In this document: positions 1,330-20,021 of the stretch, piece by piece | Layout: every line of letters begins with the position of its first letter | How positions within the stretch are numbered: position 1 is the stretch's first letter | IMG/VR virus record: IMGVR_UViG_3300036846_000743 | Span: 124,001-188,000 of that record | Strand: one strand, 5' to 3' | DNA length: 64,000 nt | Made by a program: the position numbers and the translations under genes | The notes under the pieces: model-generated | What the model was told of the DNA's origin: nothing | Databases searched by the model: none | Seen by the model: only the letters and a program-made list of their open reading frames with translations

Positions 1330-1339
1330 AGGGCCCTCC

Positions 1340-2470
1340 TTACTTGGGGTGCGGCTGTACCAGTTGCTGTCCAGCGACGCGGCCCAGCGATCCAGCCAGG
1401 CTGGGTAATTGCGGCGGGGACGGCTCTGCCGGCTTCTCGGGCTTCGCCGGCTTGCCATCGGTCGGCGTCATGAGCCGGTTCCAGACGGCCATCTGATTGG
1501 CCTTGATCCGGTTCAGGAATTGGTCGGCCGCCTGGCCGACACTGGCGTGCTTCTCTTTCTTCGCCGGCTCCTCGTCTGGTTCCTTCCTGGCCCCGAACGC
1601 ACGGTGCCAGATCGACGGCTTCGGCCGCATGATCGGTGTCGGCATCGGGATCGCCATGATCGGGCTCGGGGCCTGCTCGGCAATCTGGGCCTGCCGCCGC
1701 TTCACTGCCTCCTCGACGGCCTTGTCCTCGGCCGTTGATCTGGCCCAGTGATAACCACCCAGGCCGGCACCCAGCATGAGGCCGCCGCCCAGCGTCAGGG
1801 CACCACCCATAAGCGGACCGTACCAGCCTTCTGCCTGCTTCTCGTAGAGACTGGCCAGCACATCGAGCGAGCTGGGCTTCGGATCTGCCGAAGCCAGCTT
1901 GCGCCGGCCGGCCAGCGCACTCTCGTAGCCCTTGCGCGCCTCTTCCAGCTCACTCTCCTGCTCGGCCGTCCGGGTCTTGTCGAGCAGATAGTCAGTCAGC
2001 TTCCAGCCGCCATAGCCACCGGCGCCGACGGCTGCGACGCCAGCCGGAATGGCCCATGGCATGTCCAACGGACTTTTCGCGCCCCAGCCCCCCAGCCAGT
2101 TCTGGGCCGTATTCGCCACCTGACCGGGCCGACGAAGCAGACCCATCCAGTCGGCCACATGCCGCATGTCAAAAGCCAGCTTGGCGAACTCGGCCTCCTT
2201 CTCCTCTGTCGCTGCGAGCATGGCATCTCGCTCCGCAGGAGTGCGGACTGCGACCGGCACCGGAATTCGCACGAACGACTGGCGCATCGGAGTCCGCGCC
2301 GGGCCGCCCAGGTTGCGACCCAGGAAGTTGCCGACACCGGACATGGCTCGCGATCCGGCCCCGAGCGCCGTTGCTCCAAGGCCCAGCCCGATGATGGTGC
2401 GAAGCGCATCCACCTGGGCCTGGTTGTTGGGGCCAAGTCCCGTGCGGCCGAACAGATCGTCTATGGACAT
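1340..2470 (-). CDS. Glycine-zipper protein with K-x-A motifs, putative virion/ejection protein
   Basis: 376 aa; three Gly-rich hydrophobic hairpins (GLGLGATALGAG, AGVAAVGAGGYGGW, GGALTLGGGLMLGAGLGGYHW); motifs AKLA, RKLA, EKQA, EKHA; SD AAGGAGG. Confidence 0.75.
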   Translation of the reverse strand: MSIDDLFGRTGLGPNNQAQVDALRTIIGLGLGATALGAGSRAMSGVGNFLGRNLGGPARTPMRQSFVRIPVPVAVRTPAERDAMLAATEEKEAEFAKLAFDMRHVADWMGLLRRPGQVANTAQNWLGGWGAKSPLDMPWAIPAGVAAVGAGGYGGWKLTDYLLDKTRTAEQESELEEARKGYESALAGRRKLASADPKPSSLDVLASLYEKQAEGWYGPLMGGALTLGGGLMLGAGLGGYHWARSTAEDKAVEEAVKRRQAQIAEQAPSPIMAIPMPTPIMRPKPSIWHRAFGARKEPDEEPAKKEKHASVGQAADQFLNRIKANQMAVWNRLMTPTDGKPAKPEKPAEPSPPQLPSLAGSLGRVAGQQLVQPHPK

Positions 2471-2485
2471 CGCTCGCCTCCTTGC

Positions 2486-2884
2486 TTACCCCAGCACGCT
2501 GAGATCATTTTCGCGCGACCGGACCATCATGCTGATGGCATCCGACTCCTTGGGAGCGACCCCGTAAACCTGGATCCACTCGAGCCAGATCCGATAGCCG
2601 CGCTTGACCGGGTTGTACATCTTCTCACGATCGATGACCTTGAACCAGCCGTTCACCGCCCGCTCCTGGACGTAAAGATATTCCCTGACGTCAGGTGCTT
2701 CCCACATCTCGAACCAGCGAGCGTGATAGGTGAACTTGTGCTCCAGCTCCTCGTACTCGTGCTGCTTCATTGCCCCGGCGACACGGCCCAGGATGGGGAA
2801 TCCCGCATCGGTGCCGGGCCACGTCAGGTGATCGCCGTGCCGCTCCCGTGATTGTTCGGCTCCGAACTTCTCCACCAGGCCCAT
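2486..2884 (-). CDS. Hypothetical protein
   Basis: 132-aa globular-looking ORF tightly packed in the minus-strand operon. Confidence 0.7.
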   Translation of the reverse strand: MGLVEKFGAEQSRERHGDHLTWPGTDAGFPILGRVAGAMKQHEYEELEHKFTYHARWFEMWEAPDVREYLYVQERAVNGWFKVIDREKMYNPVKRGYRIWLEWIQVYGVAPKESDAISMMVRSRENDLSVLG

Positions 2885-2893
2885 GGCATTCTC

Positions 2894-3337
2894 TCAGATC
2901 TTGTGGAAAGACCGGGGTCGTGGCTGAGCCGCAAGTGCGGCATCCATGATCGCCTTGCGCCGGGCCAGATCGGCCTGCGTGTTGTAGGTGGCGATCAGTT
3001 CTTCGCGCTGCACATCCTGGGGATCGATATCCCCCTCCCGCATCTTGCCAATCCCGTAACCGATGCCACCAGCACCGAGAGCTGCGGCGCCGAGGCCGAT
3101 GGGCACTCCTGTCGTGAGAGCCCAGGTAGGAACCCCCGTGATGACATCCCCCGCAGTGGATATCACCTTTTTCCCGATGTCCTTCGCCATATCCATGAGG
3201 AAGCCGTTGGCACGCTTCTCGAGCCCGCAGGCGGCACGCACCTCGGCCTGTTCGGCAGTCAGGCCCTCCTCGGCACAGCGAAGAAGGAAGCCATATTTGA
3301 ACCCTTCCCTGGGGGTCATCGCAGCCCTCCGTGTCAC
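2894..3337 (-). CDS. Small glycine-zipper membrane/virion protein
   Basis: 147 aa; EKRA motif followed by GVPIGLGAAALGAGGIGYGIG; ATGA overlap with upstream gene. Confidence 0.75.
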   Translation of the reverse strand: MTRRAAMTPREGFKYGFLLRCAEEGLTAEQAEVRAACGLEKRANGFLMDMAKDIGKKVISTAGDVITGVPTWALTTGVPIGLGAAALGAGGIGYGIGKMREGDIDPQDVQREELIATYNTQADLARRKAIMDAALAAQPRPRSFHKI

Positions 3338-3786
3338 TGAGAATTGTTATCATCAGGCAGGATAAGCGATGACATGCCGGCCACGCTCGTTCCAGTCGGT
3401 CGCCGTATCTCGCCCTGATAGCTGTAAACGACTTCAGGCATCATAACCTGCGTGGGTAGCCGACGCACGGCCTCGGTGATGCCCTCGCGGGTGTGCGGAT
3501 CGCCCTGGGCCCTGGCCTGGCGAGCCACCTTGACCATGTTCTCGACCAGCGTAACGATCTGGCCGCGCTCATCGGGATACTTCTCGCGCCACGCCTGGTC
3601 AGAGAGAGCCTTGGCCCGCAGTAGCCATTCTCTCACCGAACACTCGGTGTACTCGCCAGTCACCTCGTGGACCGTGTGGACCAGCCCGCGTTCGGCCCAG
3701 AACTTGGTCTGGCGGAAGTCGAAGACCTTGCGATTGGACGACGTCCGGACGTAGGGCGCCCGGCCGTTGTGTCGCTTACTCATCAC
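3334..3786 (-). CDS. Hypothetical protein
   Basis: 150-aa ORF with SD (GGAAAGGA) and overlap with next gene. Confidence 0.7.
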   Translation of the reverse strand: MMSKRHNGRAPYVRTSSNRKVFDFRQTKFWAERGLVHTVHEVTGEYTECSVREWLLRAKALSDQAWREKYPDERGQIVTLVENMVKVARQARAQGDPHTREGITEAVRRLPTQVMMPEVVYSYQGEIRRPTGTSVAGMSSLILPDDNNSQ

Positions 3787-3800
3787 GCATCCTTTCCAGC

Positions 3801-3814
3801 GTTACGCAGCGTAA
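3801..3814. promoter_or_regulatory. Palindromic intergenic element GTTACGCAGCGTAA (copy 1 of 4)
   Basis: Intergenic, 15 nt upstream of 3786; near-identical copies at 32473, 39590, 49956. Confidence 0.6.
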
Positions 3815-3826
3815 GCACCGAGAGCC

Positions 3827-4678
3827 TCAGCCAAGACCGGAAATGATAGCACGGCCGGTCTCTCGCGCGGTCAAGTAAGGACTGATACTGTGTGCCTTGG
3901 CGCCATTGTGAACAAGAAAGTTCTCGACGTAGGGACCGAATACCGGACGCAGATCCTTGACCAGCGCGACGATGTCACCGTCGTCGGCGATATTGAACCA
4001 CTGCTTCACCGTCATGCCTGGCCAGACGCCAAGCCCAACCACAGGAGCAGGCTGGAGCCGATCGAAGATCAGGTTCCTGATGCCCAGTGGCGATCCCAGC
4101 GTGATCAAGGTCGTGACTGGCCAATCATGATGGGCGCAGAGGCATTCATACGCGACCACGGACCCCAGCGAATGCCCGATCAGCACGCGGGTATCATCGG
4201 TGACTACCTTCTCGACATGCTCCAGCGCCATGCGGCGAAAGCCGTCATCCTGAAAGTACGCGGACACTTGCTTCAAGTTGAAGATGAGCGCCTTCTCTGC
4301 GAGCCCAGCGAAGAAACTAGAATGGCTCAGTGCCTCGAGAGCGCGCTGGACAAACCAGGAAGTGTGGCCCGTCACAAACCGATCGGGGGGTACAACCTTG
4401 TCAGGCTCGGCCTTGGCAGCGGCAAGGCACCAGGCGTTAAGCAGATCTTCCTCGAAAGGATCGGTGATGGAGTCCGCATCATAGAGCTGCTCGCTTGGCA
4501 TCAGGCCCTTGGGCCGGAAAAGCTCAGCATAAAAAGTACAGACCAGGTCCTCGGGCGCCGGAGGTGTTCCCCCGGCGAGCGAGATACCGTCGCACAGGGG
4601 CGCGAACCATTCCTGATGGAGAATGCTCGGCCCCTTGTACTGCTGGGCAATACCGTGGACGGCAACAATCCGGGACAA
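3827..4678 (-). CDS. Alpha/beta hydrolase
   Basis: VAVHGI oxyanion motif, GHSLG nucleophile elbow, LITLGSP, DGDIV acid and late AHS histidine. Confidence 0.85.
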   Translation of the reverse strand: MSRIVAVHGIAQQYKGPSILHQEWFAPLCDGISLAGGTPPAPEDLVCTFYAELFRPKGLMPSEQLYDADSITDPFEEDLLNAWCLAAAKAEPDKVVPPDRFVTGHTSWFVQRALEALSHSSFFAGLAEKALIFNLKQVSAYFQDDGFRRMALEHVEKVVTDDTRVLIGHSLGSVVAYECLCAHHDWPVTTLITLGSPLGIRNLIFDRLQPAPVVGLGVWPGMTVKQWFNIADDGDIVALVKDLRPVFGPYVENFLVHNGAKAHSISPYLTARETGRAIISGLG

Positions 4679-10680: not shown

Positions 10681-13600
10681 TCAGCCGAAGAGACTCCAGG
10701 GCCGCTGATAGCCTGGCGACCCTACTCTGCGAAGAACTTCCCGGAATTGTTCGTTGAGTTCTTCTTTTCGCTCGGACATCCGCTCGAGCACCTCGTCGGC
10801 TGATGGCCGGGGCTTCTCGCCGAACACCTTGCCGAGCCAACCGGGCGGCGGCATCTTTGCAACAAACCGCTGTATCTTCACGTGTCGTAATTCCTCGGGC
10901 AAGCCTTCATGGCTGTCGAACCGCAGCCCGCGGCCGCGCGCCTGGCCAAGTCTGGCCTCATTCCAGTGCGGATCGAGTAGCTGGATCAGCTGGGTGCCCT
11001 TGGCCGAGATTCCCTCGGCGGCGGCTGGCCCCAGCAGGAGCACCCGGCTCCGGCCCGAGTTGTAGTCATCCAGCGCTTTCTTGCGGGCCTCTTCGGGCAT
11101 GCTGCCGTGGAATTGCCCGAACGGGATCTTGGCCTCAGCCAGGCCGGCGGCATAAGGCGTCAAGCCGGCGTCGATGAAGTTCGAATAGATAATGGCCTTG
11201 GCTCTCGGATCTTTCGCCAGAGTTTCTTGGAGATGGCTCATGGCCGACTGGAGCTTGGACGACGTCTGGAACGCCCGGATCGGGTCGTGCGACGAGTGAT
11301 ACGGATAGAGTGATAACGCAGCCTGACGTGGCCCCGTCATGAAGGCAGACAGATGGCCGATCTCCTGCTTGGTGAGCGGATAGTCGTTGGACAGCTTCCA
11401 GCGCATGAGCCAGGGGAGCTTGCCCCACATCAGCTTGTAGAAGTCCTGCTGCTCGGAGCCCATGTCGACTTCGACCCGCTCGTCCTTGGTCGAGACCCCT
11501 TCGGGAGTCCGGGACGGCTGATAGTCCACGTGCCCTTCGAGCATGCGCTCCAGGTCTTCCTCGTTCTGGATCTTGGGCACCTTGACCGGTTTGACGCCCT
11601 GGAGCCAGCCGAAGAACCCGGGATTGACCGTCTCGTTGCCAACATACTTCTTGGTGAACGCGCCCGGACTCATCTCCTCGCCGCGCAGGATCGATAGCGG
11701 CACGGCCAGATCACTGGGTGCGTTCACGATGGGCGTGCCCGAAAGCAAGATCCGGTGCGGGGCTCGCATGCCCAGCTCCATCGCGGCCCGGGCACCGGCC
11801 GACTGCGGGTTCCGGATCCGCTGAACTTCGTCCATGATGACGGTGTTCGGCGTGACCGATGGCTGCTTACCCATGCCAATCCCAGTATATGACATCACGT
11901 TGGTCGGTGTAGACTGATCAGTAAATTTACCTAATTCCTTGAGGTAATTACCTCTGAGGCTCGCCGGCACGACAGCTGTGAATGGCCCGCCGGTCTCCTC
12001 GGCGGCAGCCAGGCTGGCCAAGGACTTTCCTGAGCCCAGACCATGGTAGACCAGCAGGTTCTGGCCCTCGCCGACCCGTTTGGCCACGCGTTCCTGCTGG
12101 GGCTGGAGCCGGACCCAGGGCAGCAGGTCGGCCCGCTTCTCGCCCCAACTGTGACCACACCTGTTGCACTTACCGTCGTCCGGATCGCGCTCGAGCCGGG
12201 CATGGCACTTCGGGCAGCACTCGCCGGCCGGACACGGGTCGCCCTTCTCGTCGGTGGGGCTGCCGACGGCCCGGGCCCAGGCAGCAGCCTTCGCAGGCAA
12301 AAGCCTGATCCTGGACTTGTCGATCGGGTCTCCCTTCGGGGCCTTCTCTCCGTTATAGACCACGGCATCCAGGTCTTCCGGTGTCACGCGCACGGCCCTG
12401 ATATGACTCAGTCCCTCATCGATGTGCCGGGACAGGCGGTGCCGGCCATCCCAGAGCGTACCATCGATGCCAACCAGAATTGGCTTGTTCATGTTGACGG
12501 CAGCGTATCGCTTCTTCGAATAGCCAGTGCTTGCCGACCGGTTGGGCTTCTCGATGTCGCCCAGGGGAATGTTCTCGACCTTGCGCCCGGCCGTACGGCT
12601 GACCAGGTCATCGATGTCGTAGGTCTTGCCGCCCCTGCTGACGGTGTTGGTGCGAACCCAGTCGGCGACCTTGAGCCGACCACCGACCATGGCGAGGGAA
12701 GCATGGATCCTGAAGCCCGTCGGCTTGTGAGTCAGGCCGGCCATGTCCCGGATGGTCGAGTCGATCTTGAACTCACTGGGGCGCTCGTGGATCAGCCTGG
12801 AGAGGATCTGGTACTTGGCACGGTAATTCTTCCGGTCACTCTCGGCCTTGGCCAGCTTCAGGTCGGCCAGGGCCGGATGCACCTTGGCGGTCTTCTCTTC
12901 CTCTTCTTCGATCTGCTGGATGACCTCGGGGATGATCGCATTGGGTTTGCCCAAGAGCGATCCCTGGATCGCGTCCCACCATGATGGGGCCGGCGGCGGC
13001 AGCCGGCGACGACTGCGCGGGGTGACAACAGGAGGTGGCGGATCAGTGATCCCGAGCAGCCCGGCCAGCTTCAGCGTCGCAGCAGTGTCAGCATGGCTGG
13101 CCACCTTGTTGATGTCTTCGTGCAGGCCCAGGAACGACGGCACCCGCAGGGCGCCTGATGGCAGCTTCTGCTGCGCGCGGACCCGGGCCACCCGGCCGAT
13201 ATAAGCCGACGGGTCCCTGGCGATGTCGGCCAGGGTCTCGTCGCTGAAGCCCGTGCCAACCCGGCCCACGGTCTTGCCCGGCTCATGGCCGTAGGTCAGG
13301 CCGCCCACAGTCGCAGCCCGCTGGCCTTCGCCCGGAAAAGTCCCGGTGACGTGTACATCGTGTTCCTCGAAGAGCTTGGCCTTCGAGGGCACGCCGGTTC
13401 TGGGATGATAGACAATTCCCTCTTCGGTAAGAGGATGTTCACCCGATCGGATCATGTCCCAGAGCTTGGTTGCGCTTGCTGGATCTCTGAATTCCTCGGA
13501 GACGTGGAACTTATCTGAAGGCAGGTGTCCAGCAATCTCTTCAAGCATTCGCCGACGATCTGATCGGGATGTAACGGCGGGATCGATGGGCTTCTTGCCG

Positions 13601-16600
13601 TACTGCTGAACGTCGTAGAGCATGTTGCGAAGCGTGAGGCCCTTTGCCTTCTGGAGCTGGAGACTGCGCGCAATACTGGAATTAAGTAGCTGGCCGACAT
13701 CCTGGGGACCGGTTCGGCGAGTTGTGACTTCAGGATCGCCTGGAAGGCCAGCAGCCCCGCTGCCACGCGGTGTTCCGTTGGCGTGTACCGTTTCCAGCCC
13801 TTCATGGCCCGTACCCACATCCGGACCACCATCAGGCGATCTTCGTCCAGTCTCCGTATCCGGTTGCGTTGCCTTACTTCCTCCTCCTGGTTGTAGTCGT
13901 GAGGCATACAGCTCGCCCTTCAAGATCGATCCTTCGAGGTGCCTGGGGACCGGGACCTCGGGGCGCCCGCCAAACAGGCGTTCCGTGTGGAAGATGGGCC
14001 GGCCGGTTGTCTTCGACGTCCTGAAGGATAACGCCTCGGCATGACCGCCTGCTAGTCTGATGAGCTGACTGGCGCCATCGACCTTGGCTTCTACCGTGTC
14101 GCCTTCCTGCATAGCTTTCAGGGCTGGCTCGACATCTTCGGGCGCGATCTTCTTGTAGCGAACTTTTTCGTAAGGGACCTGGTCCCGAGGGGTCGTGTTC
14201 ATGAGCAGCCAGTTCTTGTTGCCCCAGCCCTTGGGCCGGACCAGCGTGAACCGCTCGGGATGTCTCTGATGGGCCGTCGTGAAGTGTATTGACTCAGGAG
14301 TGGCTTTCGTGATCAGGATCTGGCCCTTGGTATGGGTCTTGACCGTGCCCTTGCCGTAGCCCTGGGGAATTTCTCCCTCGAAATTCCCGTACTCATGCCG
14401 ATGCACGGGCTGCTGCACGGCAAGATGTCGTTCCCCCGGTGGGGGTACTCCCTTGCGCGCGGCCCAGGAGAGCAGGCCCATGTCCGGGTTGCCGAACCTG
14501 ATGTCATGATGAAGACCCGCGCGCTCGGCTTCGTGCCTTTGCACTATGTAGTCCAGCATCTGGCCAACCTGGAGCTTATCAAGCTGGCCCATGTTGGACC
14601 TGGACGGCAGCCCGGGAGCGTAGTCGGCTTCGGCCTTCTTGCCCAGCTGGTAAGCCAGCGCCGGCGCTGCGACGCCACCAGCGATCATGCCGAGCATCGA
14701 CATGAGATTGCGGCGGCGCTCCTGCCGGCGCCGCTCGTAGTAGTCAAGCTCATCCTCGTCGTCGGGCGACACGACCCCGCCCAGCGCGCCGCCGAGCAAG
14801 TGACCACCCAGGAGGCCGGCGCCAGCGGCCCCGGCCAGGGTCAAGACCCGGTTGCGGATCTCGGGATCGGCCCAGCTCTCGCGTACCCCTGCCCACATGC
14901 CGGCCTGGGTTGCCGGCCGCGCCGCCGCCAAGAAGTCGGCTGGCCTGGGCGACCCGGCCGCCCTGGCAGCCACCGCGATGGGATCCTGCGATAGCGCCGC
15001 TCCGGGGCCAAGGCCCAGCCAGCTGCGGGCCTGCTGCTGTACCGTGTTGGCCGTCTGTCTGGCGATCTGGGACTGCATCTCCGGGCGGCTCGCGATATCG
15101 ACGGCCATGCTCTGGAACTCGGGCTTCTGGGCCATCTCGAGCAGCTTTGCTTGCAGCGCCGGATTGTTTGCCGCCTGCGAGATAACTTTCTGCCCTTCCG
15201 GAGTGCTGGCGAAGTTCGTGAGCGCCTGCACGACTTCGGGCTTCTGGGCCATCTCGCCCAGCACTTTCTGTCCCTCCGGGGTGCTGGCATAGTTCGTGAG
15301 CGCTCCCGTGACTTCGGGCTTCTGGGCCATCTCGCCCAGTGTTTTTCGCCCTTCCGGAGTACCGACATACTTCGTGAGTGCCCCTACGACTTCGGGCTTC
15401 TGGGCCAGCCCGCTTATGGTCTTCTGTCCCTCCGGGGTACCAACATACTTCGTGAGTGCCCCCATGACTTTGGGCTGCTGCGCCAACCCGCCCAGCGCCT
15501 TCTGTCCCTCCGGGGTACCGGCGTAGTTGCCAATGGCCTCCGTAACTGCGGGCTGCTGCGCCAGCCCGCCCAGTGTCTTCTGTCCCTCCGGAGTACTGGC
15601 GAAGTTGGTGATGGCCTCTGTAACTTCGGGCCGCTGGAAGAACCCGCCTATGGTCTTCTGCCCCTCTGGGGTGTTGGCGTAATTGGTGATGGCCCCCATG
15701 ACTTCGGGCTTCTGGAAGAGCCCGCCTATGGTTTTCTGCCCTTCTGGAGTGCTGGCATAATTCGTGATCGCTTTCGTGACTTCGGGCTGATCAGCCAGTC
15801 CAGCCAAGGTCTTTTGCATATCCGGATTGGTCAAGGACTGGGTAAACGCTTTCTGTACTGCTGGGTTGGCCGCGGTATTCGCAAGGAACTGCTGCATCTT
15901 GGGATCGTTCAGGGTCTGCGACAGCATCGCCTGGCCCTGGGGATTGTTCAGCTGCTCCCCGATGAACTTCTGCGTCTCGGGACTGGTCACAAGCTGTTGC
16001 ACGCCCTTCTGGACAACCGGACTATCCATCACGTGCTGCCGCATCCGGGGATCGGTGAGTGTCCGGGTGAGCGGCTGAACGATCGGGCTGGTCATGCTGG
16101 CAATCGGGTTGGCCTTCATCTCGGGCGTGTACTTGGCTATGGCCTCATCGACAGCCTTCTGGTAAATGGGCGCGGGATCCTCCTTCATGGGGATGAACTG
16201 GCCGGCCGCACTCATCGCGAGACCGAACGGCGAGGCCAGCCGGGCAGCATCCACGAAGCCCATGGTATTGGGATACTTCTGGCGCGCCGTGTAATAGTCG
16301 TGCCGCAGGAACGGGATCGTGGACTTGGCAGCCACGTCGCCCACCATCTTGCCGATGGCCGACTCGTCGGGCTTGCCGGTAACCCAGCTCACTCCCGGAA
16401 TATTCCGGGAAGCCCAGCTCACTCCTGGAATTCTGTGCAGCAGCTGGGTTGCCACCGGGCCGCGCAGGCCCCGCAGTTCCTCCTTGGCCCACGGCTGCTT
16501 CAACTCCTTGATGCCTGCTTCCGACAATCCCAGCCCCCTGCCCAGCATGGTCGCTTCCTGGCTCTCGAAGACCGGCTGCGTCGCCATGTTGTAGCCGGCC

Positions 16601-19600
16601 AGGCCCAGGCCAGTACCGGTCGCAGCAGTGCTCCCGTAACGCAGCGTCTGGCCCAGCGCCTGCCGCTGCCAGTCCCAGCGACGCTGCGGTGGCTGCGGGG
16701 CAGGGTTATTCAGGAGCTTACTCCACGGAGTAGTCGCAGCTTGCGGAACGCCACCTTTCGGGATGGGGACTTTGGGAGTGACTTCCCGGTGCAGGCCCGG
16801 GATCTGCGGGCTGAAGGTGAACCTGGCAGCATTGCCGGCGCCGATAAGAGGGCGCTTCCAGCCCTCGCCACTCACGCCCCAGAACTGACCCGGCGCCGCG
16901 CCGGACATGTGATACGCGCCACGGCCTATGGCACCAAGGCCCCCCTTGGCCCGTGACCACAGTCCTCCCGCCTCCTTGGTCATCGCCACCTTGAGATTGG
17001 GATCAATCCTGGCGACGTTGTGAACGAGCCCCGGCATCCGCCTGGTCGCAGCACCCTCGATAACCTGCCAGTCCGGCGCTGCAAACATATCCTTCCAGTA
17101 CTGCTCGTCGTCACCAAGGTTGCTCGGATTCAGGGTGTTCCACCATGAGTTGACGTGGCCCTTGAACCAGTCCAGCGCCTTCTTGGCCTCGGCCGGCGAT
17201 GTCACTTCCCTGCCGGTGTTCTGGGCATATACCCGCTTGACGAGGGCCAGCCGGGGATCAAGCTCGTCGGGCGAAAAGAGATAGTTCAGGTTATGTTTCG
17301 GTCCGAATGACGGCGTACCGCCCAGCGTCTTGACCAGCTTCTGCCCCGACGACGTGATCTCCGGATCAATCTTCGCGAGATTGGCCAGCTCCTTGGCCGT
17401 GCCTCCACGCTCAAGGACCCGCTTGATCGGCGCCATCTGCATTCCCGAGTGCGTCAGCTCGTGCCCCACGGTTTGCTGCTGATCGTGCACATTGACCAGG
17501 CTGTCCTTCGGCATCGTGATGACTGCCGGTGGCGCTGCTGGCCTGTTGACCATAGGCGTGGTCACGCCGGCGTAAGTCTCGTTTTCCGCGCCCGGTATCG
17601 CGATCCCTTTAGGGAGCTTGACGGTCTTCCCGGGCACCTCGACGACCGGTACCTTGGTGTGAAGATCCTCAGCCTTCCAGGGAACCGAGGGGATCGACGG
17701 AGCATAGGGCACCTGCTTGCCTTCCGCTCGCCGGATGACCCCTTCGACACCGCCCTCCATCTTCCCGTAATACGGATCGAGGCTCTCGGCCAGGCTCTTC
17801 ATCTTCGCCCCGGGAGGTACCACGTAAGGCGCATCCGGCGCGGGAGCTACAGGCGGCTGCTGCTGTTGCTGCTGCTGTAGCCGCTGTGCCTTGGCCCTGC
17901 CGATGTAGTAGGCCCCGCCCAGGCCACCCAGACCGGCGCCGTAGATCACGTCGCGTAACGGGTCTTCGCTGCCGAAGAGCTTCCCGAGCCCCCAGCCGCC
18001 CAGGCCGCCGGCACCAGCGCCGATCAGCATCGGAGCATAGTCCTTGAAGTCGCCTTGCTTCTCGCCAAGCCGGGCCAGCCAGCCGACCGCGCGGCCCCTG
18101 TCACCGCGCTGCCGCAGCCGATCCATGAACTCGACCAAAGGATCGCTATCTTCGCCATCTTCGTCATCATCTTCGCCAGCGCCGTCTGGCTTGGGGAAGG
18201 ATATCCGGGTGATGGAGATTCGCTGTATCGAGATCGGTATCCTGATCTTACGTCCGCCGTTATCTTCGCCATTATGTACATCGTCGCTAGCCCCACTGTG
18301 TACATCTTCGTCATCATCTTCGCCGTCGGTGGTTGTAGCTACTTTGGCTATCGAGACGGTATTCCCAGCATCTCCTCGACCGTCCAGCCATTGTGCAACC
18401 GATCGTAGAGGGTGCTCACGGGAATACCCAGCTGCGATGCCCATTGACCGATTGTCTGTTTCTTTCCGTGGAAGGAGAACTGGCGCCGTGGCTGCTTTGG
18501 TCGTGAAAGCGGTATTCCCCGTGACAATCGATAAGTCACGTGTGCCCGCGAGCAACCCAGCAGACGAGCTGCGTCCGCCGTACTCATCTTCTGGCCGTCG
18601 AATTCGACCCAGTGAGTCGTCCGTCGGGGCCGACCACGTGGCGTTAGAATTGCCTCCTCGTCTGTCCAGCCGAGCCTCACTATGCGTCCGCGGAGTACCG
18701 TCGGATGCAAGCCAGTCCGTTCGGCCCACTCGGCGATCGTCCGAGTCTCGCCCTGGCATGTCAGCAGCCGATTGGTTCGCGTATTTCGTGCTTGCGCTTT
18801 CCGTGATGCCCAAATGCAGTTTGCTTTGGAATAGCCCTTGCTGTTTTCCTTTCGCTCGAGGGTCATTCCCGCCGGCCGATCTCCCATGTCCCGGTAGAAC
18901 GCCATGAAGCGCCGCTGCCAACTTTGACACACCGTAATTCCGCGCCCGCCATAATTCTTGTAACCGCGGCTCGTCGGATTCAGACAACGCTCCTTCATCT
19001 TGCACCAAGTCGTGTACGCTCGCGTCTTGACCAGACCGTGATACTGCCGTTTGATCATTGGCCGCCTTGCTGACTTCGTTAGGTTTGAGAACATTGCGAC
19101 GTCTTACACCTATAGTGATGTGAAATTCATGATCACCATTGGGCAAAGGAGTCAGACCATAGCTCTTCCGCAGGGCCTTGAGATCGGAAGAGCTAACCCG
19201 TACAAACCACGCCTTGGACATCTCGGGCCAGCCCTTGGGTTCGACTTCCATGATCGGTCCAAGTTGATAACTGAACGGATGACCACGTTCACTTATCTTG
19301 TCAGGACCACCGATCTTTTTGACATCCTGATCGGTGAGGGCGCTAATATGGGCGTTGAGCACGCCGTCTCGCAGCGGCAATTCAGCGCCTGGCGCTTCGA
19401 GCGCATCGAATAATCCCCTAACAAGTGCATTGGGGACGCTGACCAAACCCCAGCCGCTCGCACTGACATATAACCGACCATGGAGTATGGGTACCGCCAC
19501 CGGGGCGCCGCCTGCCTTGATCAACATACCGTAAGCTGCGGCGACCTGGTAATAGTCCAGGTCTTCGGCTGCCCGGCGGCGAGCCAGTGTGGCCGGATCG

Positions 19601-19614
19601 ATCGTGAGCGACAT
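10681..19614 (-). CDS. Giant multidomain polyvalent protein/polyprotein (2H phosphoesterase, Gly zippers, HExxH peptidase, helical repeats, LigD phosphoesterase, ATP-dependent DNA ligase, ParB-like, Zn finger, SNF2 helicase)
   Basis: 2977-aa uninterrupted ORF, SD AAGGAGG; domain motifs listed in the sub-features. Confidence 0.9.
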   Translation of the reverse strand: MSLTIDPATLARRRAAEDLDYYQVAAAYGMLIKAGGAPVAVPILHGRLYVSASGWGLVSVPNALVRGLFDALEAPGAELPLRDGVLNAHISALTDQDVKKIGGPDKISERGHPFSYQLGPIMEVEPKGWPEMSKAWFVRVSSSDLKALRKSYGLTPLPNGDHEFHITIGVRRRNVLKPNEVSKAANDQTAVSRSGQDASVHDLVQDEGALSESDEPRLQELWRARNYGVSKLAAALHGVLPGHGRSAGGNDPRAKGKQQGLFQSKLHLGITESASTKYANQSAADMPGRDSDDRRVGRTDWLASDGTPRTHSEARLDRRGGNSNATWSAPTDDSLGRIRRPEDEYGGRSSSAGLLAGTRDLSIVTGNTAFTTKAATAPVLLPRKETDNRSMGIAAGYSREHPLRSVAQWLDGRGDAGNTVSIAKVATTTDGEDDDEDVHSGASDDVHNGEDNGGRKIRIPISIQRISITRISFPKPDGAGEDDDEDGEDSDPLVEFMDRLRQRGDRGRAVGWLARLGEKQGDFKDYAPMLIGAGAGGLGGWGLGKLFGSEDPLRDVIYGAGLGGLGGAYYIGRAKAQRLQQQQQQQPPVAPAPDAPYVVPPGAKMKSLAESLDPYYGKMEGGVEGVIRRAEGKQVPYAPSIPSVPWKAEDLHTKVPVVEVPGKTVKLPKGIAIPGAENETYAGVTTPMVNRPAAPPAVITMPKDSLVNVHDQQQTVGHELTHSGMQMAPIKRVLERGGTAKELANLAKIDPEITSSGQKLVKTLGGTPSFGPKHNLNYLFSPDELDPRLALVKRVYAQNTGREVTSPAEAKKALDWFKGHVNSWWNTLNPSNLGDDEQYWKDMFAAPDWQVIEGAATRRMPGLVHNVARIDPNLKVAMTKEAGGLWSRAKGGLGAIGRGAYHMSGAAPGQFWGVSGEGWKRPLIGAGNAARFTFSPQIPGLHREVTPKVPIPKGGVPQAATTPWSKLLNNPAPQPPQRRWDWQRQALGQTLRYGSTAATGTGLGLAGYNMATQPVFESQEATMLGRGLGLSEAGIKELKQPWAKEELRGLRGPVATQLLHRIPGVSWASRNIPGVSWVTGKPDESAIGKMVGDVAAKSTIPFLRHDYYTARQKYPNTMGFVDAARLASPFGLAMSAAGQFIPMKEDPAPIYQKAVDEAIAKYTPEMKANPIASMTSPIVQPLTRTLTDPRMRQHVMDSPVVQKGVQQLVTSPETQKFIGEQLNNPQGQAMLSQTLNDPKMQQFLANTAANPAVQKAFTQSLTNPDMQKTLAGLADQPEVTKAITNYASTPEGQKTIGGLFQKPEVMGAITNYANTPEGQKTIGGFFQRPEVTEAITNFASTPEGQKTLGGLAQQPAVTEAIGNYAGTPEGQKALGGLAQQPKVMGALTKYVGTPEGQKTISGLAQKPEVVGALTKYVGTPEGRKTLGEMAQKPEVTGALTNYASTPEGQKVLGEMAQKPEVVQALTNFASTPEGQKVISQAANNPALQAKLLEMAQKPEFQSMAVDIASRPEMQSQIARQTANTVQQQARSWLGLGPGAALSQDPIAVAARAAGSPRPADFLAAARPATQAGMWAGVRESWADPEIRNRVLTLAGAAGAGLLGGHLLGGALGGVVSPDDEDELDYYERRRQERRRNLMSMLGMIAGGVAAPALAYQLGKKAEADYAPGLPSRSNMGQLDKLQVGQMLDYIVQRHEAERAGLHHDIRFGNPDMGLLSWAARKGVPPPGERHLAVQQPVHRHEYGNFEGEIPQGYGKGTVKTHTKGQILITKATPESIHFTTAHQRHPERFTLVRPKGWGNKNWLLMNTTPRDQVPYEKVRYKKIAPEDVEPALKAMQEGDTVEAKVDGASQLIRLAGGHAEALSFRTSKTTGRPIFHTERLFGGRPEVPVPRHLEGSILKGELYASRLQPGGGSKATQPDTETGRRSPDGGPDVGTGHEGLETVHANGTPRGSGAAGLPGDPEVTTRRTGPQDVGQLLNSSIARSLQLQKAKGLTLRNMLYDVQQYGKKPIDPAVTSRSDRRRMLEEIAGHLPSDKFHVSEEFRDPASATKLWDMIRSGEHPLTEEGIVYHPRTGVPSKAKLFEEHDVHVTGTFPGEGQRAATVGGLTYGHEPGKTVGRVGTGFSDETLADIARDPSAYIGRVARVRAQQKLPSGALRVPSFLGLHEDINKVASHADTAATLKLAGLLGITDPPPPVVTPRSRRRLPPPAPSWWDAIQGSLLGKPNAIIPEVIQQIEEEEEKTAKVHPALADLKLAKAESDRKNYRAKYQILSRLIHERPSEFKIDSTIRDMAGLTHKPTGFRIHASLAMVGGRLKVADWVRTNTVSRGGKTYDIDDLVSRTAGRKVENIPLGDIEKPNRSASTGYSKKRYAAVNMNKPILVGIDGTLWDGRHRLSRHIDEGLSHIRAVRVTPEDLDAVVYNGEKAPKGDPIDKSRIRLLPAKAAAWARAVGSPTDEKGDPCPAGECCPKCHARLERDPDDGKCNRCGHSWGEKRADLLPWVRLQPQQERVAKRVGEGQNLLVYHGLGSGKSLASLAAAEETGGPFTAVVPASLRGNYLKELGKFTDQSTPTNVMSYTGIGMGKQPSVTPNTVIMDEVQRIRNPQSAGARAAMELGMRAPHRILLSGTPIVNAPSDLAVPLSILRGEEMSPGAFTKKYVGNETVNPGFFGWLQGVKPVKVPKIQNEEDLERMLEGHVDYQPSRTPEGVSTKDERVEVDMGSEQQDFYKLMWGKLPWLMRWKLSNDYPLTKQEIGHLSAFMTGPRQAALSLYPYHSSHDPIRAFQTSSKLQSAMSHLQETLAKDPRAKAIIYSNFIDAGLTPYAAGLAEAKIPFGQFHGSMPEEARKKALDDYNSGRSRVLLLGPAAAEGISAKGTQLIQLLDPHWNEARLGQARGRGLRFDSHEGLPEELRHVKIQRFVAKMPPPGWLGKVFGEKPRPSADEVLERMSERKEELNEQFREVLRRVGSPGYQRPWSLFG
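10750..12135 (-). other. SNF2/SF2 helicase domain of polyprotein
   Basis: LQPQQ Q-motif, HGLGSGKS Walker A, IMDEVQRIRN, LLSGTP, IIYSNF, AEGISAKG, DPHWN, QARGRGLR. Confidence 0.9.
12150..12260 (-). other. Zinc finger in polyprotein
   Basis: CPKCHARLERDPDDGKCNRCGH (CxxC...CxxC). Confidence 0.7.
12340..12660 (-). other. ParB/Srx-like domain of polyprotein
   Basis: KPILVGIDGTLWDGRHRL, matching the ParB-N DG.HR signature. Confidence 0.7.
13100..14190 (-). other. ATP-dependent DNA ligase (adenylation + OB domains) of polyprotein
   Basis: EAKVDG (motif I), LKGELY (III), MLYDV (IIIa), EEGIVY (IV), KAK (V); OB fold with GRVGTGFSDE and ALRVPSF. Confidence 0.85.
13452..13907 (-). CDS. Possible nested +1-frame ORF within the ligase insertion
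   Basis: Over ~13700-13907 codon bias favours this frame (CAC GAC TAC AAC CAG GAG GAG) over the host frame (TCA CGA CTA CAA CCA GGA GGA). Confidence 0.4.
   Translation of the reverse strand: MPHDYNQEEEVRQRNRIRRLDEDRLMVVRMWVRAMKGWKRYTPTEHRVAAGLLAFQAILKSQLAEPVPRMSASYLIPVLRAVSSSRRQRASRFATCSTTFSSTARSPSIPPLHPDQIVGECLKRLLDTCLQISSTSPRNSEIQQAQPSSGT
14200..14620 (-). other. LigD-type 3'-phosphoesterase (PE) domain of polyprotein
   Basis: YIVQRHEAERAGLHHDIRF..LLSWAARKG..RHLAVQQPVH..EYGNFEGEIPQGYGKGTV matches the LigD_N consensus. Confidence 0.9.
15142..15765 (-). repeat. Eight tandem 78-nt (26-aa) coding repeats
   Basis: TNYAxTPEGQKTxGxLAQKPEVxxAL; first and last TPEG at 15750 and 15204 are 546 nt = 7x78 apart; degenerate 13-aa units extend to ~16050. 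Confidence 0.9.
17040..17700 (-). other. Zincin-like metallopeptidase domain of polyprotein
   Basis: VGHELTH (HExxH at 17449-17463) with downstream YLFSPDELDPRL as candidate third ligand. Confidence 0.6.
18348..19058 (-). mobile_element. HNH-type homing endonuclease gene overprinted in the +1 frame inside the polyprotein ORF
   Basis: WCKMKERCLNP..YKNYGGRGITVC..W..FMAFYRDMGDRPAGMTLERKENSKGYSKANCIWA..Q.RN, then two HTH-like repeats (GETRTIAEWA, GKKQTIGQWA); likely start ATG 19058 after AAGGCGG (track start 19094). Confidence 0.85.
19090..19510 (-). other. 2H phosphoesterase domain of polyprotein
   Basis: Two H-x-S/T motifs: NAHIS (19348) and FHITI (19120), with spacing typical of LigT/Acb1-like enzymes. 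Confidence 0.7.
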
Positions 19615-19628
19615 CAGCGACCTCCTTG

Positions 19629-20021
19629 TCAGTGCTCAATCGGAGGTGATCCCGGAGGCCCCTTGCTTCCATTGCGAACGGCCTTCACGGCGATCTCGGC
19701 CAGCTGCCGGGCAGCCGCAGCAGCCCGATCTTCAGGCCAGGGCTTGTCCTTGCCAGCGTCGGCCTGTCCCTGCAAATAGCTGACCTTGAGTGCGGCCTTG
19801 ATCTCCTCGGCGACTTCGTCGATCTGGACGTCTGCCTTTTCCAGGATCCGGGTGGATGTGCGCGCGATCAACCGCAGTAGCTCAGCTCGACCTTCGTCGT
19901 GCTGCTCGTTGATCTTGTCCTGCTTCTTGGCCAGCTGCGCCACCGACCAGCGTGTATAGACCTGCAACCCGGCAACGATCAAGAATGCAAGCAGCTGGTA
20001 GATATTGCTGATGTTTTCCAT
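19629..20021 (-). CDS. Single-TM membrane protein with coiled coil (holin/spanin-like unproven)
   Basis: IYQLLAFLIVAGLQVY TM; its RBS GACAAGGAGGTCGC is identical to that of the polyprotein gene. Confidence 0.7.
   Translation of the reverse strand: MENISNIYQLLAFLIVAGLQVYTRWSVAQLAKKQDKINEQHDEGRAELLRLIARTSTRILEKADVQIDEVAEEIKAALKVSYLQGQADAGKDKPWPEDRAAAAARQLAEIAVKAVRNGSKGPPGSPPIEH

What the first reader, a model, noticed from the sequence alone, without database searches (positions are those of the whole stretch)
18340..19070. HNH homing endonuclease overprinted inside a polyprotein and bracketed by putative protease sites: a splicing-free way for a selfish gene to sit in a host ORF
Seen: a complete HNH gene (18348-19058) lies on the same strand in the +1 frame, wholly inside the 2977-aa ORF, whose own frame stays stop-free across about 237 codons. 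Codon usage shows the HNH frame is native: host-frame codons here often end in A/T (GTA TCA, TTA CAA GAA TTA), unlike the rest of the gene. In the host frame, K-A-A (AAG GCG GCC, which doubles as the SD-like AAGGCGG) sits directly before the HNH ATG, and K-V-A follows directly after its TAG. Three more sites (SKLA, TKYA, TKAA) lie inside. There is no room for group I/II intron structure and no intein motif. Inference: the junk peptide read through the HNH is cut out by the same K-x-A protease that separates the polyprotein modules, so polyprotein processing takes the place of splicing.
Basis: partly seen in the sequence, partly recalled or inferred. Interest (0 to 1): 0.92.

Follow-up and report, generated by a model that had tools for sequence, protein, structure and literature searches.

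The report
Hidden endonuclease gene inside phage polyprotein
A selfish endonuclease gene sits in a shifted reading frame inside a giant phage multi-enzyme gene, and the giant gene is apparently translated straight through it with no splicing; this arrangement was first described in 2025, and this is a well-supported new example.

Summary
A 236-codon ORF (18348-19058, minus strand) lies in the +1 frame inside a 2977-codon ORF (10681-19614). It matches PHROG "HNH endonuclease" families (E=2e-63). The host frame has no stop across it.

This is unlikely to be chance. Synonymous shuffles give P=0.0006, and native genes of the window give 0.5-2.4%. None of 43 at-risk codon junctions carries the T needed for a stop.

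Eight relatives of the host protein join the 2H domain directly to the acidic linker. The insert is therefore 720 nt, almost exactly the ORF. I found no intron, no intein blocks and no restart codon.

The same nuclease family sits in the same +1 frame, stop-free, in 11 other loci. Three are polyvalent proteins without inteins, including cultured Ralstonia phage Gamede gp42. Eight are inside mini-inteins; annotated Hamiltonella phage APSE-1 P46-in-P45 shows the same nesting.

Splicing-free read-through is supported. The kind is already published: the ShiLan/Pacc40 "hidden HNH" elements (Arsenault et al. 2025) and out-of-frame intein endonucleases.

The K-x-A protease idea is only weakly supported. 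A refined motif, K[AVLI]A[AD], is enriched at module borders, but cleavage is untested.

The "HNH" label rests on PHROG annotation alone.

The parts
10681..19614 (-). Host ORF, 2977 aa: a phage polyvalent (multi-enzyme) protein. Modules: 2H-SAK phosphoesterase, an HExxH stretch, GerD-like repeats, LigD 3'-phosphoesterase, ATP-ligase OB domain, SNF2 helicase.
   Evidence: relatives P0001-P0008
19060..19614 (-). N-terminal 2H-SAK module (aa 1-185), ending in the conserved SKAA.
   Evidence: Pfam PF22547 at aa 82-175. 51-79% identical in 8 relatives. AF2 pLDDT 65-84.
19060..19071 (-). S-K-A-A codons (AGC AAG GCG GCC). This is the conserved end of the 2H module. Its AAGG lies 6 nt before the inner ATG and could serve as a Shine-Dalgarno sequence.
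18340..19059 (-). The insertion as delimited by insert-free relatives: 720 nt, host aa 186-425. Read in the host frame it is a stop-free peptide with no family match and no confident structure.
   Evidence: junction alignment; no Pfam hit; pLDDT 25-51
18348..19058 (-). Overprinted endonuclease-family ORF, 236 aa, +1 frame. An N-terminal nuclease-like core (predicted beta-beta-alpha) is followed by three helix-turn-helix repeats.
   Evidence: phrog_3377 E=1.9e-63. 916 phage records by tblastn. All 13 family-invariant residues are present. AF2 pLDDT 89.5. 41% identical to APSE-1 P46.
18337..18345 (-). K-V-A codons just after the inner stop. They are part of the 3' end of the insert and recreate a K-x-A next to the resumed host linker.
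18139..18336 (-). Resumed host linker (aa 427-492): an acidic tract plus the conserved RKIRIPISIQRISITRISFPKP-type segment. It has no in-frame ATG/GTG/TTG.
18100..19400 (.). Island of low G+C and low GC3 covering the insert and roughly 300 nt on each side. It may be a co-conversion or recombination tract from a lower-GC donor.

Best explanation
A homing-endonuclease-type gene has inserted as a bare ORF into the disordered acidic linker that follows the 2H domain of a phage polyvalent protein gene. It belongs to the 'YGGRGI' family that PHROGs labels HNH and is a homologue of APSE-1 P46. The insertion is 720 nt and the ORF 711 nt.

The nuclease lies in the +1 frame. It is probably made by internal initiation at ATG 19058, using the AAGG supplied by the host's K-A codons.

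Ribosomes translating the host gene read straight through the element in the host frame. This adds about 240 unstructured residues between two modules. There is no RNA splicing and no protein splicing.

The element stays harmless for two reasons. It sits in a linker. And every potential host-frame stop (T|AA, T|AG, T|GA) needs a T at the nuclease's third codon position, so stops can be avoided by synonymous codon choice alone. That choice is under selection.

Shown here: the insertion and its limits, the frame relation, stop depletion, absence of intron and intein signals, and recurrence in other loci.

Inferred: translation of both frames, nuclease activity and homing, and the fate of the extra peptide. 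The peptide may be kept as a spacer, or trimmed when the modules are separated.
For: - Stop depletion in the window: P=0.0006 and 0.0001 by shuffling; 0 of 43 risk junctions. Empirical bounds are 0.005 and 0.024.
- The same test in independent embedded copies: L003 P=0.00015 and L004 P=0.0078; L072 none of 20000 shuffles stop-free and L073 P=0.00025; Gamede P=0.005.
- About 230 other homologues were sampled. Nearly all had 1-38 stops in that frame. The exceptions were three very GC-rich loci with no real host ORF.
- Relatives P0001, P0003 and P0004 join host aa ~188 to aa ~420-438. The alignment places the insert between SKAA and the acidic tract.
- No Rfam hit at E<=10. No Pfam or NCBIfam intein hit in the host-frame insert.
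- No start codon between the inner stop and the conserved linker segment.
- The inner ORF keeps all family-invariant residues and folds confidently. The host-frame insert does not.
- Published precedent for the same architecture: PMC11855218.
Against: - There are no expression data of any kind, because the phage is an uncultured metagenomic contig.
- 2.4% of equally long windows in native genes are open in this frame by chance.
- In L003 the host frame stays open through the element but stops 44 nt later, and the downstream half restarts at an overlapping GTGA. Read-through can therefore serve translational coupling rather than a continuous protein.
- Nuclease activity is unproven. The canonical first His of HNH appears replaced (E68-R69), and Pfam, hhalign and Foldseek did not place the protein in the HNH superfamily.
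- The AF2 model of the host segment used only 6 sequences.
Confidence: 0.75

Rival explanations
1. The read-through peptide must be removed, and it is excised precisely by the protease that separates the polyprotein modules. The cuts fall at K-x-A sites on both sides (SKAA|N and AKVA|T), so proteolysis replaces splicing.
For: - K[AVLI]A[AD] is enriched in the 9 related polyvalent proteins (26 observed, 5.6 expected). K[AVLI]A is enriched too (62 vs 32.8). Both recur at homologous module borders: after 2H, before the LigD-PE module, before the helicase.
- Both ends of the window insert carry K-x-A.
- The L004 insert lies between INKVA and EKIADLLPWV, and the L003 insert ends in TKLAE.
- The host has an HExxH stretch. 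Polyvalent proteins are predicted to be processed by zincin-like peptidases (PMC5512222).
Against: - Generic K-x-A is not enriched in the host (14 vs 15.7), and the internal sites are not significant (P=0.06).
- The enrichment test ignores local Ala-rich composition and counts homologous sites repeatedly.
- The downstream site (KVAT) does not fit the refined motif.
- Gamede gp42 has the same arrangement with no K-x-A immediately adjacent to the insert.
- The upstream K-A codons have another plausible role as the nuclease's Shine-Dalgarno sequence.
- Pfam found no peptidase domain.
- No cleavage data exist.
Confidence: 0.2
2. The open host frame is a coincidence of G+C-rich sequence. The gene is effectively split: the 2H module plus a junk tail is one product, and the rest is made from an internal start.
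For: - 2.4% of native 237-codon windows are open in this frame.
- Three very GC-rich free-standing homologues (L187, L192, L223) have 0 stops by chance.
- L003 is truly split after the element.
Against: - P=0.0006 for the element's own composition.
- Stop depletion repeats in five other embedded copies tested, including two at 49-55% GC.
- No ATG/GTG/TTG lies between the inner stop and aa 493, yet aa 430-492 is conserved in relatives.
Confidence: 0.08
3. The segment is a group I or other self-splicing intron carrying the endonuclease ORF, and it is removed from the mRNA.
For: HNH-type ORFs are common in phage group I introns (established knowledge; PMC3943268 is listed).
Against: - No Rfam match at E<=10 in 17500-20000.
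- Only 1 nt (5') and 8 nt (3') of the insert lie outside the ORF, which leaves no room for a ribozyme core.
- An intron would not need a stop-free host frame, yet the frame is depleted of stops.
Confidence: 0.03
4. It is an intein, or the remnant of one, and the host-frame peptide is removed by protein splicing, as in the related intein-borne copies.
For: Eight homologous copies sit in the same +1 frame inside clear mini-inteins: Cys1, a TxDH block, and C-terminal HN|C or SN|C. APSE-1 P46 is nested in the same +1 frame inside the P45 polymerase gene, which a comparative APSE study reports as intein-bearing.
Against: - The window insert has no Cys/Ser/Thr at either junction in splicing position, no TxxH block and no terminal HN.
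- Its length equals the nuclease ORF, which leaves no room for roughly 130 aa of Hint domain.
- No Pfam or NCBIfam intein hit.
Confidence: 0.02

Closest known systems
ShiLan domain and the Pacc40 gp60 insertion: 'hidden' out-of-frame HNH insertion elements in mycobacteriophage methylase and helicase-methylase genes (Arsenault, Gosselin and Gogarten 2025, PMC11855218)
   Same: - The insertion is almost coextensive with an endonuclease ORF on the same strand in another frame.
- The host frame has no stops.
- No intein blocks and no intron are detectable.
- It is absent from close homologues.
- The host-frame peptide is predicted to be unstructured.
- Pacc40 gp60 is also a multi-domain helicase-methylase protein.
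   Different: - ShiLan's ORF starts at base 18 of the insert (the +2 frame), uses GTG, and has no ribosome-binding site. Here the frame is +1, the start is ATG, and an AAGG precedes it.
- ShiLan's nuclease is a canonical HNH with zinc fingers. This family is not hit by Pfam HNH models.
- ShiLan sits among conserved residues of an enzyme domain. This element sits in an inter-module linker.
- Homology between the two nucleases was not tested.
- The paper gives no statistical test of stop depletion.
Hamiltonella phage APSE-1 P46 nested in P45 DNA polymerase (NC_000935.1), and other inteins with out-of-frame endonucleases (bioRxiv 10.1101/2025.01.02.630785 and 10.64898/2026.09.14.751524)
   Same: P46 is 41% identical to the window nuclease (E=2e-31). 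It lies on the same strand in the same +1 frame inside the host CDS. Eight metagenomic and genomic homologues show the same arrangement.
   Different: Those copies lie between the N- and C-terminal splicing blocks of a mini-intein, so the read-through peptide leaves with the intein. The window has no splicing blocks.
Ralstonia phage Gamede gp42, annotated 'DarB-like antirestriction' (NC_054958.1)
   Same: A 184-aa homologue of the nuclease sits in the +1 frame inside a giant polyvalent protein CDS of about 4639 aa. There are no host-frame stops (P=0.005), no intein flanks, and AAAGGAGAAA lies just before the ATG. The inner ORF is not annotated in RefSeq.
   Different: The polyvalent protein family and the insertion site are different. 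No K-x-A lies immediately next to the insert. It is a cultured phage, so it can be tested.
Fractured genes: split inteins with a free-standing endonuclease gene between the halves (Dassa et al. 2009, PMC2677866). Also genes split by free-standing HNH genes, such as mobE in nrdA of phage Aeh1 (Gibb and Edgell 2007, as cited)
   Same: A free-standing-type endonuclease gene occupies a host coding region. L003 resembles this: the host gene ends 44 nt after the element and restarts at an overlapping GTGA.
   Different: In the window the host ORF is continuous, with no split and no trans-splicing parts.
Polyvalent proteins of phages and conjugative elements (Iyer et al. 2017, PMC5512222)
   Same: The host is a multi-domain protein combining repair and anti-defence-type enzymes, including the 'Swiss Army Knife' 2H domain. 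Processing by in-built metallopeptidases is predicted for the class.
   Different: That paper does not mention homing endonucleases or inteins (0 occurrences of each term).

Membership tests
Out-of-frame 'hidden HNH' insertion element (ShiLan/Pacc40 type, PMC11855218) | Insertion inside a protein-coding gene that homologues lack | tested here: met
   Relatives P0001, P0003 and P0004 join aa ~188 to aa ~420-438. In the alignment of all 8 relatives none carries the ~240-aa insert, which lies between SKAA and the acidic tract.
Out-of-frame 'hidden HNH' insertion element (ShiLan/Pacc40 type, PMC11855218) | Host reading frame passes through the insertion without a stop | tested here: met
   0 stops. 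P=0.0006 by synonymous permutation.
Out-of-frame 'hidden HNH' insertion element (ShiLan/Pacc40 type, PMC11855218) | Endonuclease ORF on the same strand, in another frame, nearly coextensive with the insertion | tested here: met
   711-nt ORF in a 720-nt insert, +1 frame. phrog_3377 E=1.9e-63.
Out-of-frame 'hidden HNH' insertion element (ShiLan/Pacc40 type, PMC11855218) | No detectable self-splicing intron or intein | tested here: met
   No Rfam hit. No Pfam or NCBIfam hit on the host-frame insert. No splicing residues at the junctions.
Out-of-frame 'hidden HNH' insertion element (ShiLan/Pacc40 type, PMC11855218) | Patchy distribution indicating active homing | tested here: inconclusive
   3 of 9 related polyvalent genes carry a copy, at two different sites. 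There is a low-GC3 island around the insert. No close alleles with and without the insert were available.
Out-of-frame 'hidden HNH' insertion element (ShiLan/Pacc40 type, PMC11855218) | Sequence homology to the ShiLan nuclease | not tested
   No accession or sequence was available in the paper text.
HNH (beta-beta-alpha-metal) endonuclease superfamily | Match to curated HNH domain models | tested here: not met
   Pfam gives only weak helix-turn-helix hits. hhalign against a canonical HNH_3+AP2 protein gives probability 0.3. The PDB profile search found nothing.
HNH (beta-beta-alpha-metal) endonuclease superfamily | Beta-beta-alpha fold with catalytic His / Asn / His-or-Asn | tested here: inconclusive
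   AF2 predicts strands 65-69 and 81-85 followed by helix 86-91. N80, N92 and R69 are invariant. The first His position appears to be E68-R69. Foldseek found no significant nuclease match, only the I-TevI DNA-binding domain at probability 0.85.
HNH (beta-beta-alpha-metal) endonuclease superfamily | Annotated family membership | tested here: met
   Hits to phrog_3377, 374, 2081 and 953, all named HNH endonuclease. RefSeq names APSE-1 P46 an HNH endonuclease. These are annotations, not assays.
Intein | N-terminal Cys/Ser with blocks A and B (TxxH), plus C-terminal His-Asn followed by Cys/Ser/Thr | tested here: not met
   The window junctions read ..SKAA|NDQT.. and ..SIAKV|ATTT.., and there is no intein hit. 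The blocks are present in L072, L073, L148, L149, L153, L167, L225 and L228.
Group I/II intron with endonuclease ORF | Ribozyme core flanking or overlapping the ORF | tested here: not met
   No Rfam match at E<=10. Only 9 nt of the insert lie outside the ORF.
Polyvalent protein (Iyer et al. 2017) | Several unrelated enzymatic domains in one phage polypeptide | tested here: met
   2H-SAK, LigD_N, ligase OB, SNF2 and Helicase_C.
Polyvalent protein (Iyer et al. 2017) | Zincin-like metallopeptidase module for self-processing | tested here: inconclusive
   An HExxH (HELTH) is visible in the translation and in P0003, but no Pfam or NCBIfam peptidase hit was found.

The most novel reading that the evidence does not exclude
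In this family of polyvalent proteins the short motif K-[AVLI]-A-[AD] marks protease cuts between modules. On this reading the endonuclease gene survives without an intron or intein because it lands next to such a cut site and carries a second one at its 3' end. The read-through peptide is then released by ordinary polyprotein maturation, so proteolysis acts as a functional substitute for splicing. A related point: this nuclease lineage keeps a 'passenger frame' free of stops by synonymous codon choice, which would let it move between mini-inteins and linker regions.
Probability: 0.2. Interest if true: 0.75.

Novelty: new member of a known kind. Interest (0 to 1): 0.5.

Why it matters
Homing endonuclease genes are usually thought to need an intron, an intein or an intergenic site to avoid killing their host gene. 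The 2025 ShiLan report suggested a fourth way: sitting out of frame inside a gene that is read straight through. That report gave no statistics and covered only actinophages.

This window and the loci found from it add four things:
- Quantitative evidence that the host frame is kept open by selection.
- A simple genetic-code reason for the +1 arrangement: all host-frame stops can be avoided by synonymous changes in the nuclease.
- Evidence that one nuclease family uses both intein-borne and 'naked' insertions.
- The observation that linkers of giant polyvalent proteins are a recurrent landing place.

For annotation, it flags that long 'hypothetical' inserts in giant phage proteins may hide endonuclease genes. 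One cultured case, Ralstonia phage Gamede gp42, could be used to test the idea directly.

Tried and rejected
- Megablast of the host gene against the phage collection found nothing.
- The search for related loci with the 2H module and with the downstream segment found only the source contig, IMGVR_UViG_3300036846_000743.
- Rfam at E<=10 gave only two chance-level hits.
- The promoter and terminator scan found nothing on the minus strand.
- Repeat search found no terminal repeats around the insert. It found only the acidic-linker repeats and an unexplained 11-nt inverted repeat.
- Pfam and NCBIfam did not recognise the nuclease core.
- The PDB profile search, hhalign against a canonical HNH_3 protein, and Foldseek against PDB did not place the protein in a solved nuclease fold.
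- The maximum-likelihood tree of 34 homologues was unresolved. L003+L004 and L072+L073 form clades, but the window copy is unplaced, so one origin or several cannot be decided.
- Generic K-x-A enrichment was tested and rejected.
- Pfam and NCBIfam did not recognise the mini-inteins of L072 and L073 either. Their identification rests on motifs, weak PDB hits to RecA mini-inteins and phrog_93 N-terminal hits.
- A +1 frameshift fusing 2H to the nuclease was considered and set aside. The inner ORF has its own ATG, a Shine-Dalgarno-like sequence and a stop, and its frame is closed 36 nt upstream.
Full report
**What is in the window**

On the minus strand an ORF of 2977 codons runs from 19614 to 10681. 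Pfam and NCBIfam find these modules:
- a 2H-SAK phosphoesterase (aa 82-175)
- GerD-like repeats
- a LigD 3'-phosphoesterase
- an ATP-ligase OB domain
- an SNF2 helicase

An HExxH stretch is visible in the translation. This is a phage 'polyvalent protein' in the sense of Iyer et al. 2017 (PMC5512222). The window is part of a 226-kb IMG/VR contig.

Inside this ORF, on the same strand and shifted by +1, lies a 236-codon ORF: ATG 19058 to TAG 18350-18348. Several results identify it as a real gene:
- It matches PHROG families named HNH endonuclease (phrog_3377, E=1.9e-63).
- It has relatives in 916 phage records.
- It keeps all 13 residues that are invariant in an alignment of 34 homologues.
- AlphaFold2 models it confidently (pLDDT 89.5). 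The model has a small core with a beta-beta-alpha element and three helix-turn-helix repeats.

In this stretch GC3 is highest in the inner frame (0.65, against 0.54 in the host frame).

**Is the open host frame more than chance?**

The host frame has 0 stops across the inner ORF, and the third frame has 11. Each host codon consists of the third base of one nuclease codon plus the first two bases of the next. A stop therefore needs a T-ending nuclease codon before a codon that starts AA, AG or GA. There are 43 such 'risk' codons, and none follows a T. Elsewhere 37 of 193 codons do.

| Test | Result |
|---|---|
| Synonymous-codon permutation | stop-free in 12 of 20000 (P=0.0006) |
| Resampling with host codon usage | P=0.0001 |
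| Junction rate in 29 native genes (11.4%) | P=0.005 |
| Stop-free 237-codon windows in native genes, this frame | 2.4% |
| Stop-free 237-codon windows in native genes, other frame | 0% |

Chance is therefore unlikely for the window alone, though not absurd. The decisive evidence is replication in other loci, described below.

**It is an insertion, and only the ORF**

A search with the 2H module found eight large relatives. In P0001, P0003 and P0004, host aa 1-188 aligns to their aa 1-190. Host aa ~420-438 then aligns to their aa ~180-200.

All nine proteins end the 2H module with ..NVL.....SKAA, and several then continue with an acidic DEDVHS-type tract. The window reads SKAA, then 240 extra residues, then ATTTDGEDDDEDVHS. 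The insert is therefore 19059-18340, 720 nt. That is 1 nt more than the ORF on the 5' side and 8 nt more on the 3' side.

- There is no Rfam hit at E<=10.
- There is no room for a ribozyme.
- The junctions carry no intein residues, and the host-frame peptide gives no intein or other family hit.
- AlphaFold2 gives the host-frame peptide pLDDT 25-51, against 65-84 for the 2H domain. The alignment was shallow.
- Between the inner stop and host aa 493 there is no in-frame ATG, GTG or TTG. Yet aa 430-492 is conserved in relatives.

The simplest way to make that segment is by ribosomes that have come through the insert.

**Replication in other loci**

The host-frame 'junk' unexpectedly matched two relatives at a different position. 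Their DNA shows why. Both L003 and L004 carry a homologous nuclease gene (42-47% identical). In both it is in the +1 frame, with no host-frame stop, inserted after the ligase module. The permutation P values are 0.00015 and 0.0078.
- In L004 the host ORF continues into the helicase.
- In L003 it stops 44 nt after the element, and the next ORF starts at an overlapping GTGA. That gene is split but still coupled.

I then fetched homologues of the nuclease from three collections, 80 loci each:
- viral contigs
- metagenomes
- genomes

Nearly all have 1-38 stops in that frame. The stop-free exceptions fall into two groups:
- Three very GC-rich loci with no real host ORF. These are chance.
- Eight loci where the nuclease lies in the +1 frame inside a long host ORF: L072, L073, L148, L149, L153, L167, L225 and L228.

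In all eight the host is a DNA polymerase A or an SNF2 helicase. The element is flanked by mini-intein blocks: Cys1, TxDH, and a terminal HN|C or SN|C. For L072, none of 20000 permutations was stop-free. For L073, P=0.00025. These loci have 49-55% GC.

A cultured, annotated example of the nested +1 arrangement exists. In Hamiltonella phage APSE-1, P46 ('HNH endonuclease') is nested in the +1 frame in P45 (DNA polymerase), and it is 41% identical to the window protein. A comparative APSE study notes an intein domain in this polymerase gene.

Finally, a tblastn search with the window's host-frame peptide hit Ralstonia phage Gamede gp42. That gene is a 'DarB-like antirestriction' CDS of about 4639 aa. 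It contains an unannotated 184-aa homologue with these features:
- +1 frame
- no host-frame stops (P=0.005)
- no intein flanks
- AAAGGAGAAA directly before the ATG

In total I found 12 embedded copies, all in the +1 frame. Four are intein-less, and all four of those are in polyvalent proteins.

**How it most likely works**

The element is a free-standing-type homing endonuclease gene that lives inside coding sequence.
- The nuclease is probably translated by internal initiation. The host's K-A codons (AAG GCG) provide an AAGG 6 nt before the ATG.
- The host protein is translated through the element.
- The +1 arrangement has a simple rationale. Every host-frame stop requires T at the nuclease's third codon position, so the passenger frame can be cleared of stops without changing the nuclease (inference from the genetic code).
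- In inteins the extra peptide leaves with the intein. In polyvalent proteins it sits in a disordered inter-module linker, where it is probably tolerated.
- The region 18100-19400 has unusually low GC3 (0.48-0.65, against 0.77-0.79 further on). Relatives show no such dip in the 2H region. This fits import of the element with flanking sequence from a lower-GC donor, but no donor is known.

**The protease idea**

Generic K-x-A is not enriched in the host (14 observed, 15.7 expected). The three internal sites are not significant (P=0.06). The upstream SKAA is an ancestral motif present in all nine proteins.

A narrower motif does stand out. K[AVLI]A[AD] occurs 26 times in the nine proteins, against 5.6 expected. 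It sits at homologous module borders:
- SKAAAD after the 2H domain
- MKLAADYAPG, RKVAADFAPG and similar before the LigD module
- EK(L/I)ADLLPW before the helicase

The inserts of the window, L003 and L004 each have a K-x-A at or near an end. Polyvalent proteins are predicted to be cut by built-in metallopeptidases.

This makes cleavage at module borders plausible. However:
- The shuffle test ignores local composition and shared ancestry.
- The downstream site (KVAT) does not fit the motif.
- Gamede has no K-x-A immediately adjacent to the insert.
- Nothing has been measured.

I rate precise proteolytic excision at about 0.2.

**Comparison with what is known**

The architecture was published in 2025 for the 'ShiLan domain' of a mycobacteriophage methylase and for Pacc40 gp60, a helicase-methylase (PMC11855218). 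Those elements have:
- an insertion nearly coextensive with an out-of-frame HNH ORF
- no host-frame stops
- no intein or intron
- an unstructured in-frame peptide proposed to be retained

Inteins with endonucleases in another frame or on the other strand are described in bioRxiv 10.1101/2025.01.02.630785 and 10.64898/2026.09.14.751524. Fractured genes are described in PMC2677866.

The window meets every structural criterion of the ShiLan type that I could test. It differs in several respects:
- frame (+1, not +2)
- start signal
- nuclease family
- host gene
- position (linker rather than enzyme domain)

One caution on the name. Pfam HNH models, a profile comparison with a canonical HNH_3 protein, the PDB sequence search and Foldseek did not place the nuclease in the HNH superfamily. 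The usual first histidine also seems replaced (E68-R69). 'HNH' is therefore an annotation label here, and activity is untested.

**Verdict**

It is a new member of a recently described kind, not a new principle.

What the analysis adds:
- statistics for selection on the passenger frame
- the +1 rule and its rationale
- the link between intein-borne and naked copies of one nuclease family
- polyvalent-protein linkers as a recurrent niche
- a cultured test case

The protease-as-splicing idea remains an attractive, untested add-on.

Noticed in passing
window 18100-19400 (and to the gene start at 19614): The 2H module, the insert and the acidic linker have GC3 0.48-0.65, while the rest of the gene has 0.77-0.79. 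Relatives L003, L004, L005 and L007 show no such dip in their 2H region. It may be a co-conversion or module-exchange tract from a lower-GC donor.
   Followed up: partly
L249 (NC_054958.1, Ralstonia phage Gamede) 6966-7520 inside CDS gp42 (starts at 3797): An unannotated 184-aa homologue of the nuclease lies in the +1 frame inside a 'DarB-like antirestriction' CDS of about 4639 aa. There are no host-frame stops and no intein flanks. This is a cultured example of the same arrangement.
   Followed up: yes
L248 (NC_000935.1, Hamiltonella phage APSE-1) 2931-3353 inside 677-3658: The annotated P46 'HNH endonuclease' is nested in the +1 frame in the P45 DNA polymerase gene and is 41% identical to the window protein. 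tblastn with the intein of L148, read in the host frame through its embedded nuclease gene, also covers 100% of the query under 'DNA polymerase' in Caulobacter phages GB2A, RW, RLK and KcrB, Shewanella phage SFCi1 and Streptococcus Javan phages. Those hits were not checked one by one.
   Followed up: partly
L003 8641-8685: In this relative the host frame stays open through the nuclease gene, stops 44 nt later, and the helicase half restarts at an overlapping GTGA in another frame. LHED is duplicated at both sides of the insert. This is a 'genes-in-pieces' version of the same event.
   Followed up: partly
host protein and relatives P0001-P0008; e.g. window aa 183, 2315, 2442: The short motif K[AVLI]A[AD] is about 4.6-fold enriched (26 vs 5.6) and recurs at homologous module borders. 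Other genes of the window show a mild excess (7 vs 2.9). It is a candidate maturation site.
   Followed up: partly
L228 (uncultured Lachnospiraceae contig) around 3600-4456: The zinc-finger N-terminus of the nuclease reads in the host frame upstream of the nuclease core. The nuclease may be frameshifted or decaying, or may be moving into the intein's frame.
   Followed up: no
L073 4807-5490: A second, canonical HNH_3+AP2 endonuclease gene lies directly after the intein-bearing polymerase fragment and before an SNF2 helicase gene. Endonuclease genes are clustered there.
   Followed up: no
window 19160-19170 / 19185-19195: A perfect 11-nt inverted repeat with a 14-nt spacer lies inside the 2H coding region, about 100 nt upstream of the insertion site. 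Its function is unknown.
   Followed up: no
L003, L004, L006 (genes just upstream of the polyvalent gene): A response-regulator receiver-domain gene immediately precedes the polyvalent gene in three relatives. The 130-aa ORF at the same place in the window (19629-20021) gave no Pfam hit.
   Followed up: no
window 15151-16956 (+) and other long antisense ORFs: Many ORFs of 100-600 aa lie opposite to or overlapping the real genes. This is expected in DNA with ~62% G+C and is not evidence of genes.
   Followed up: no
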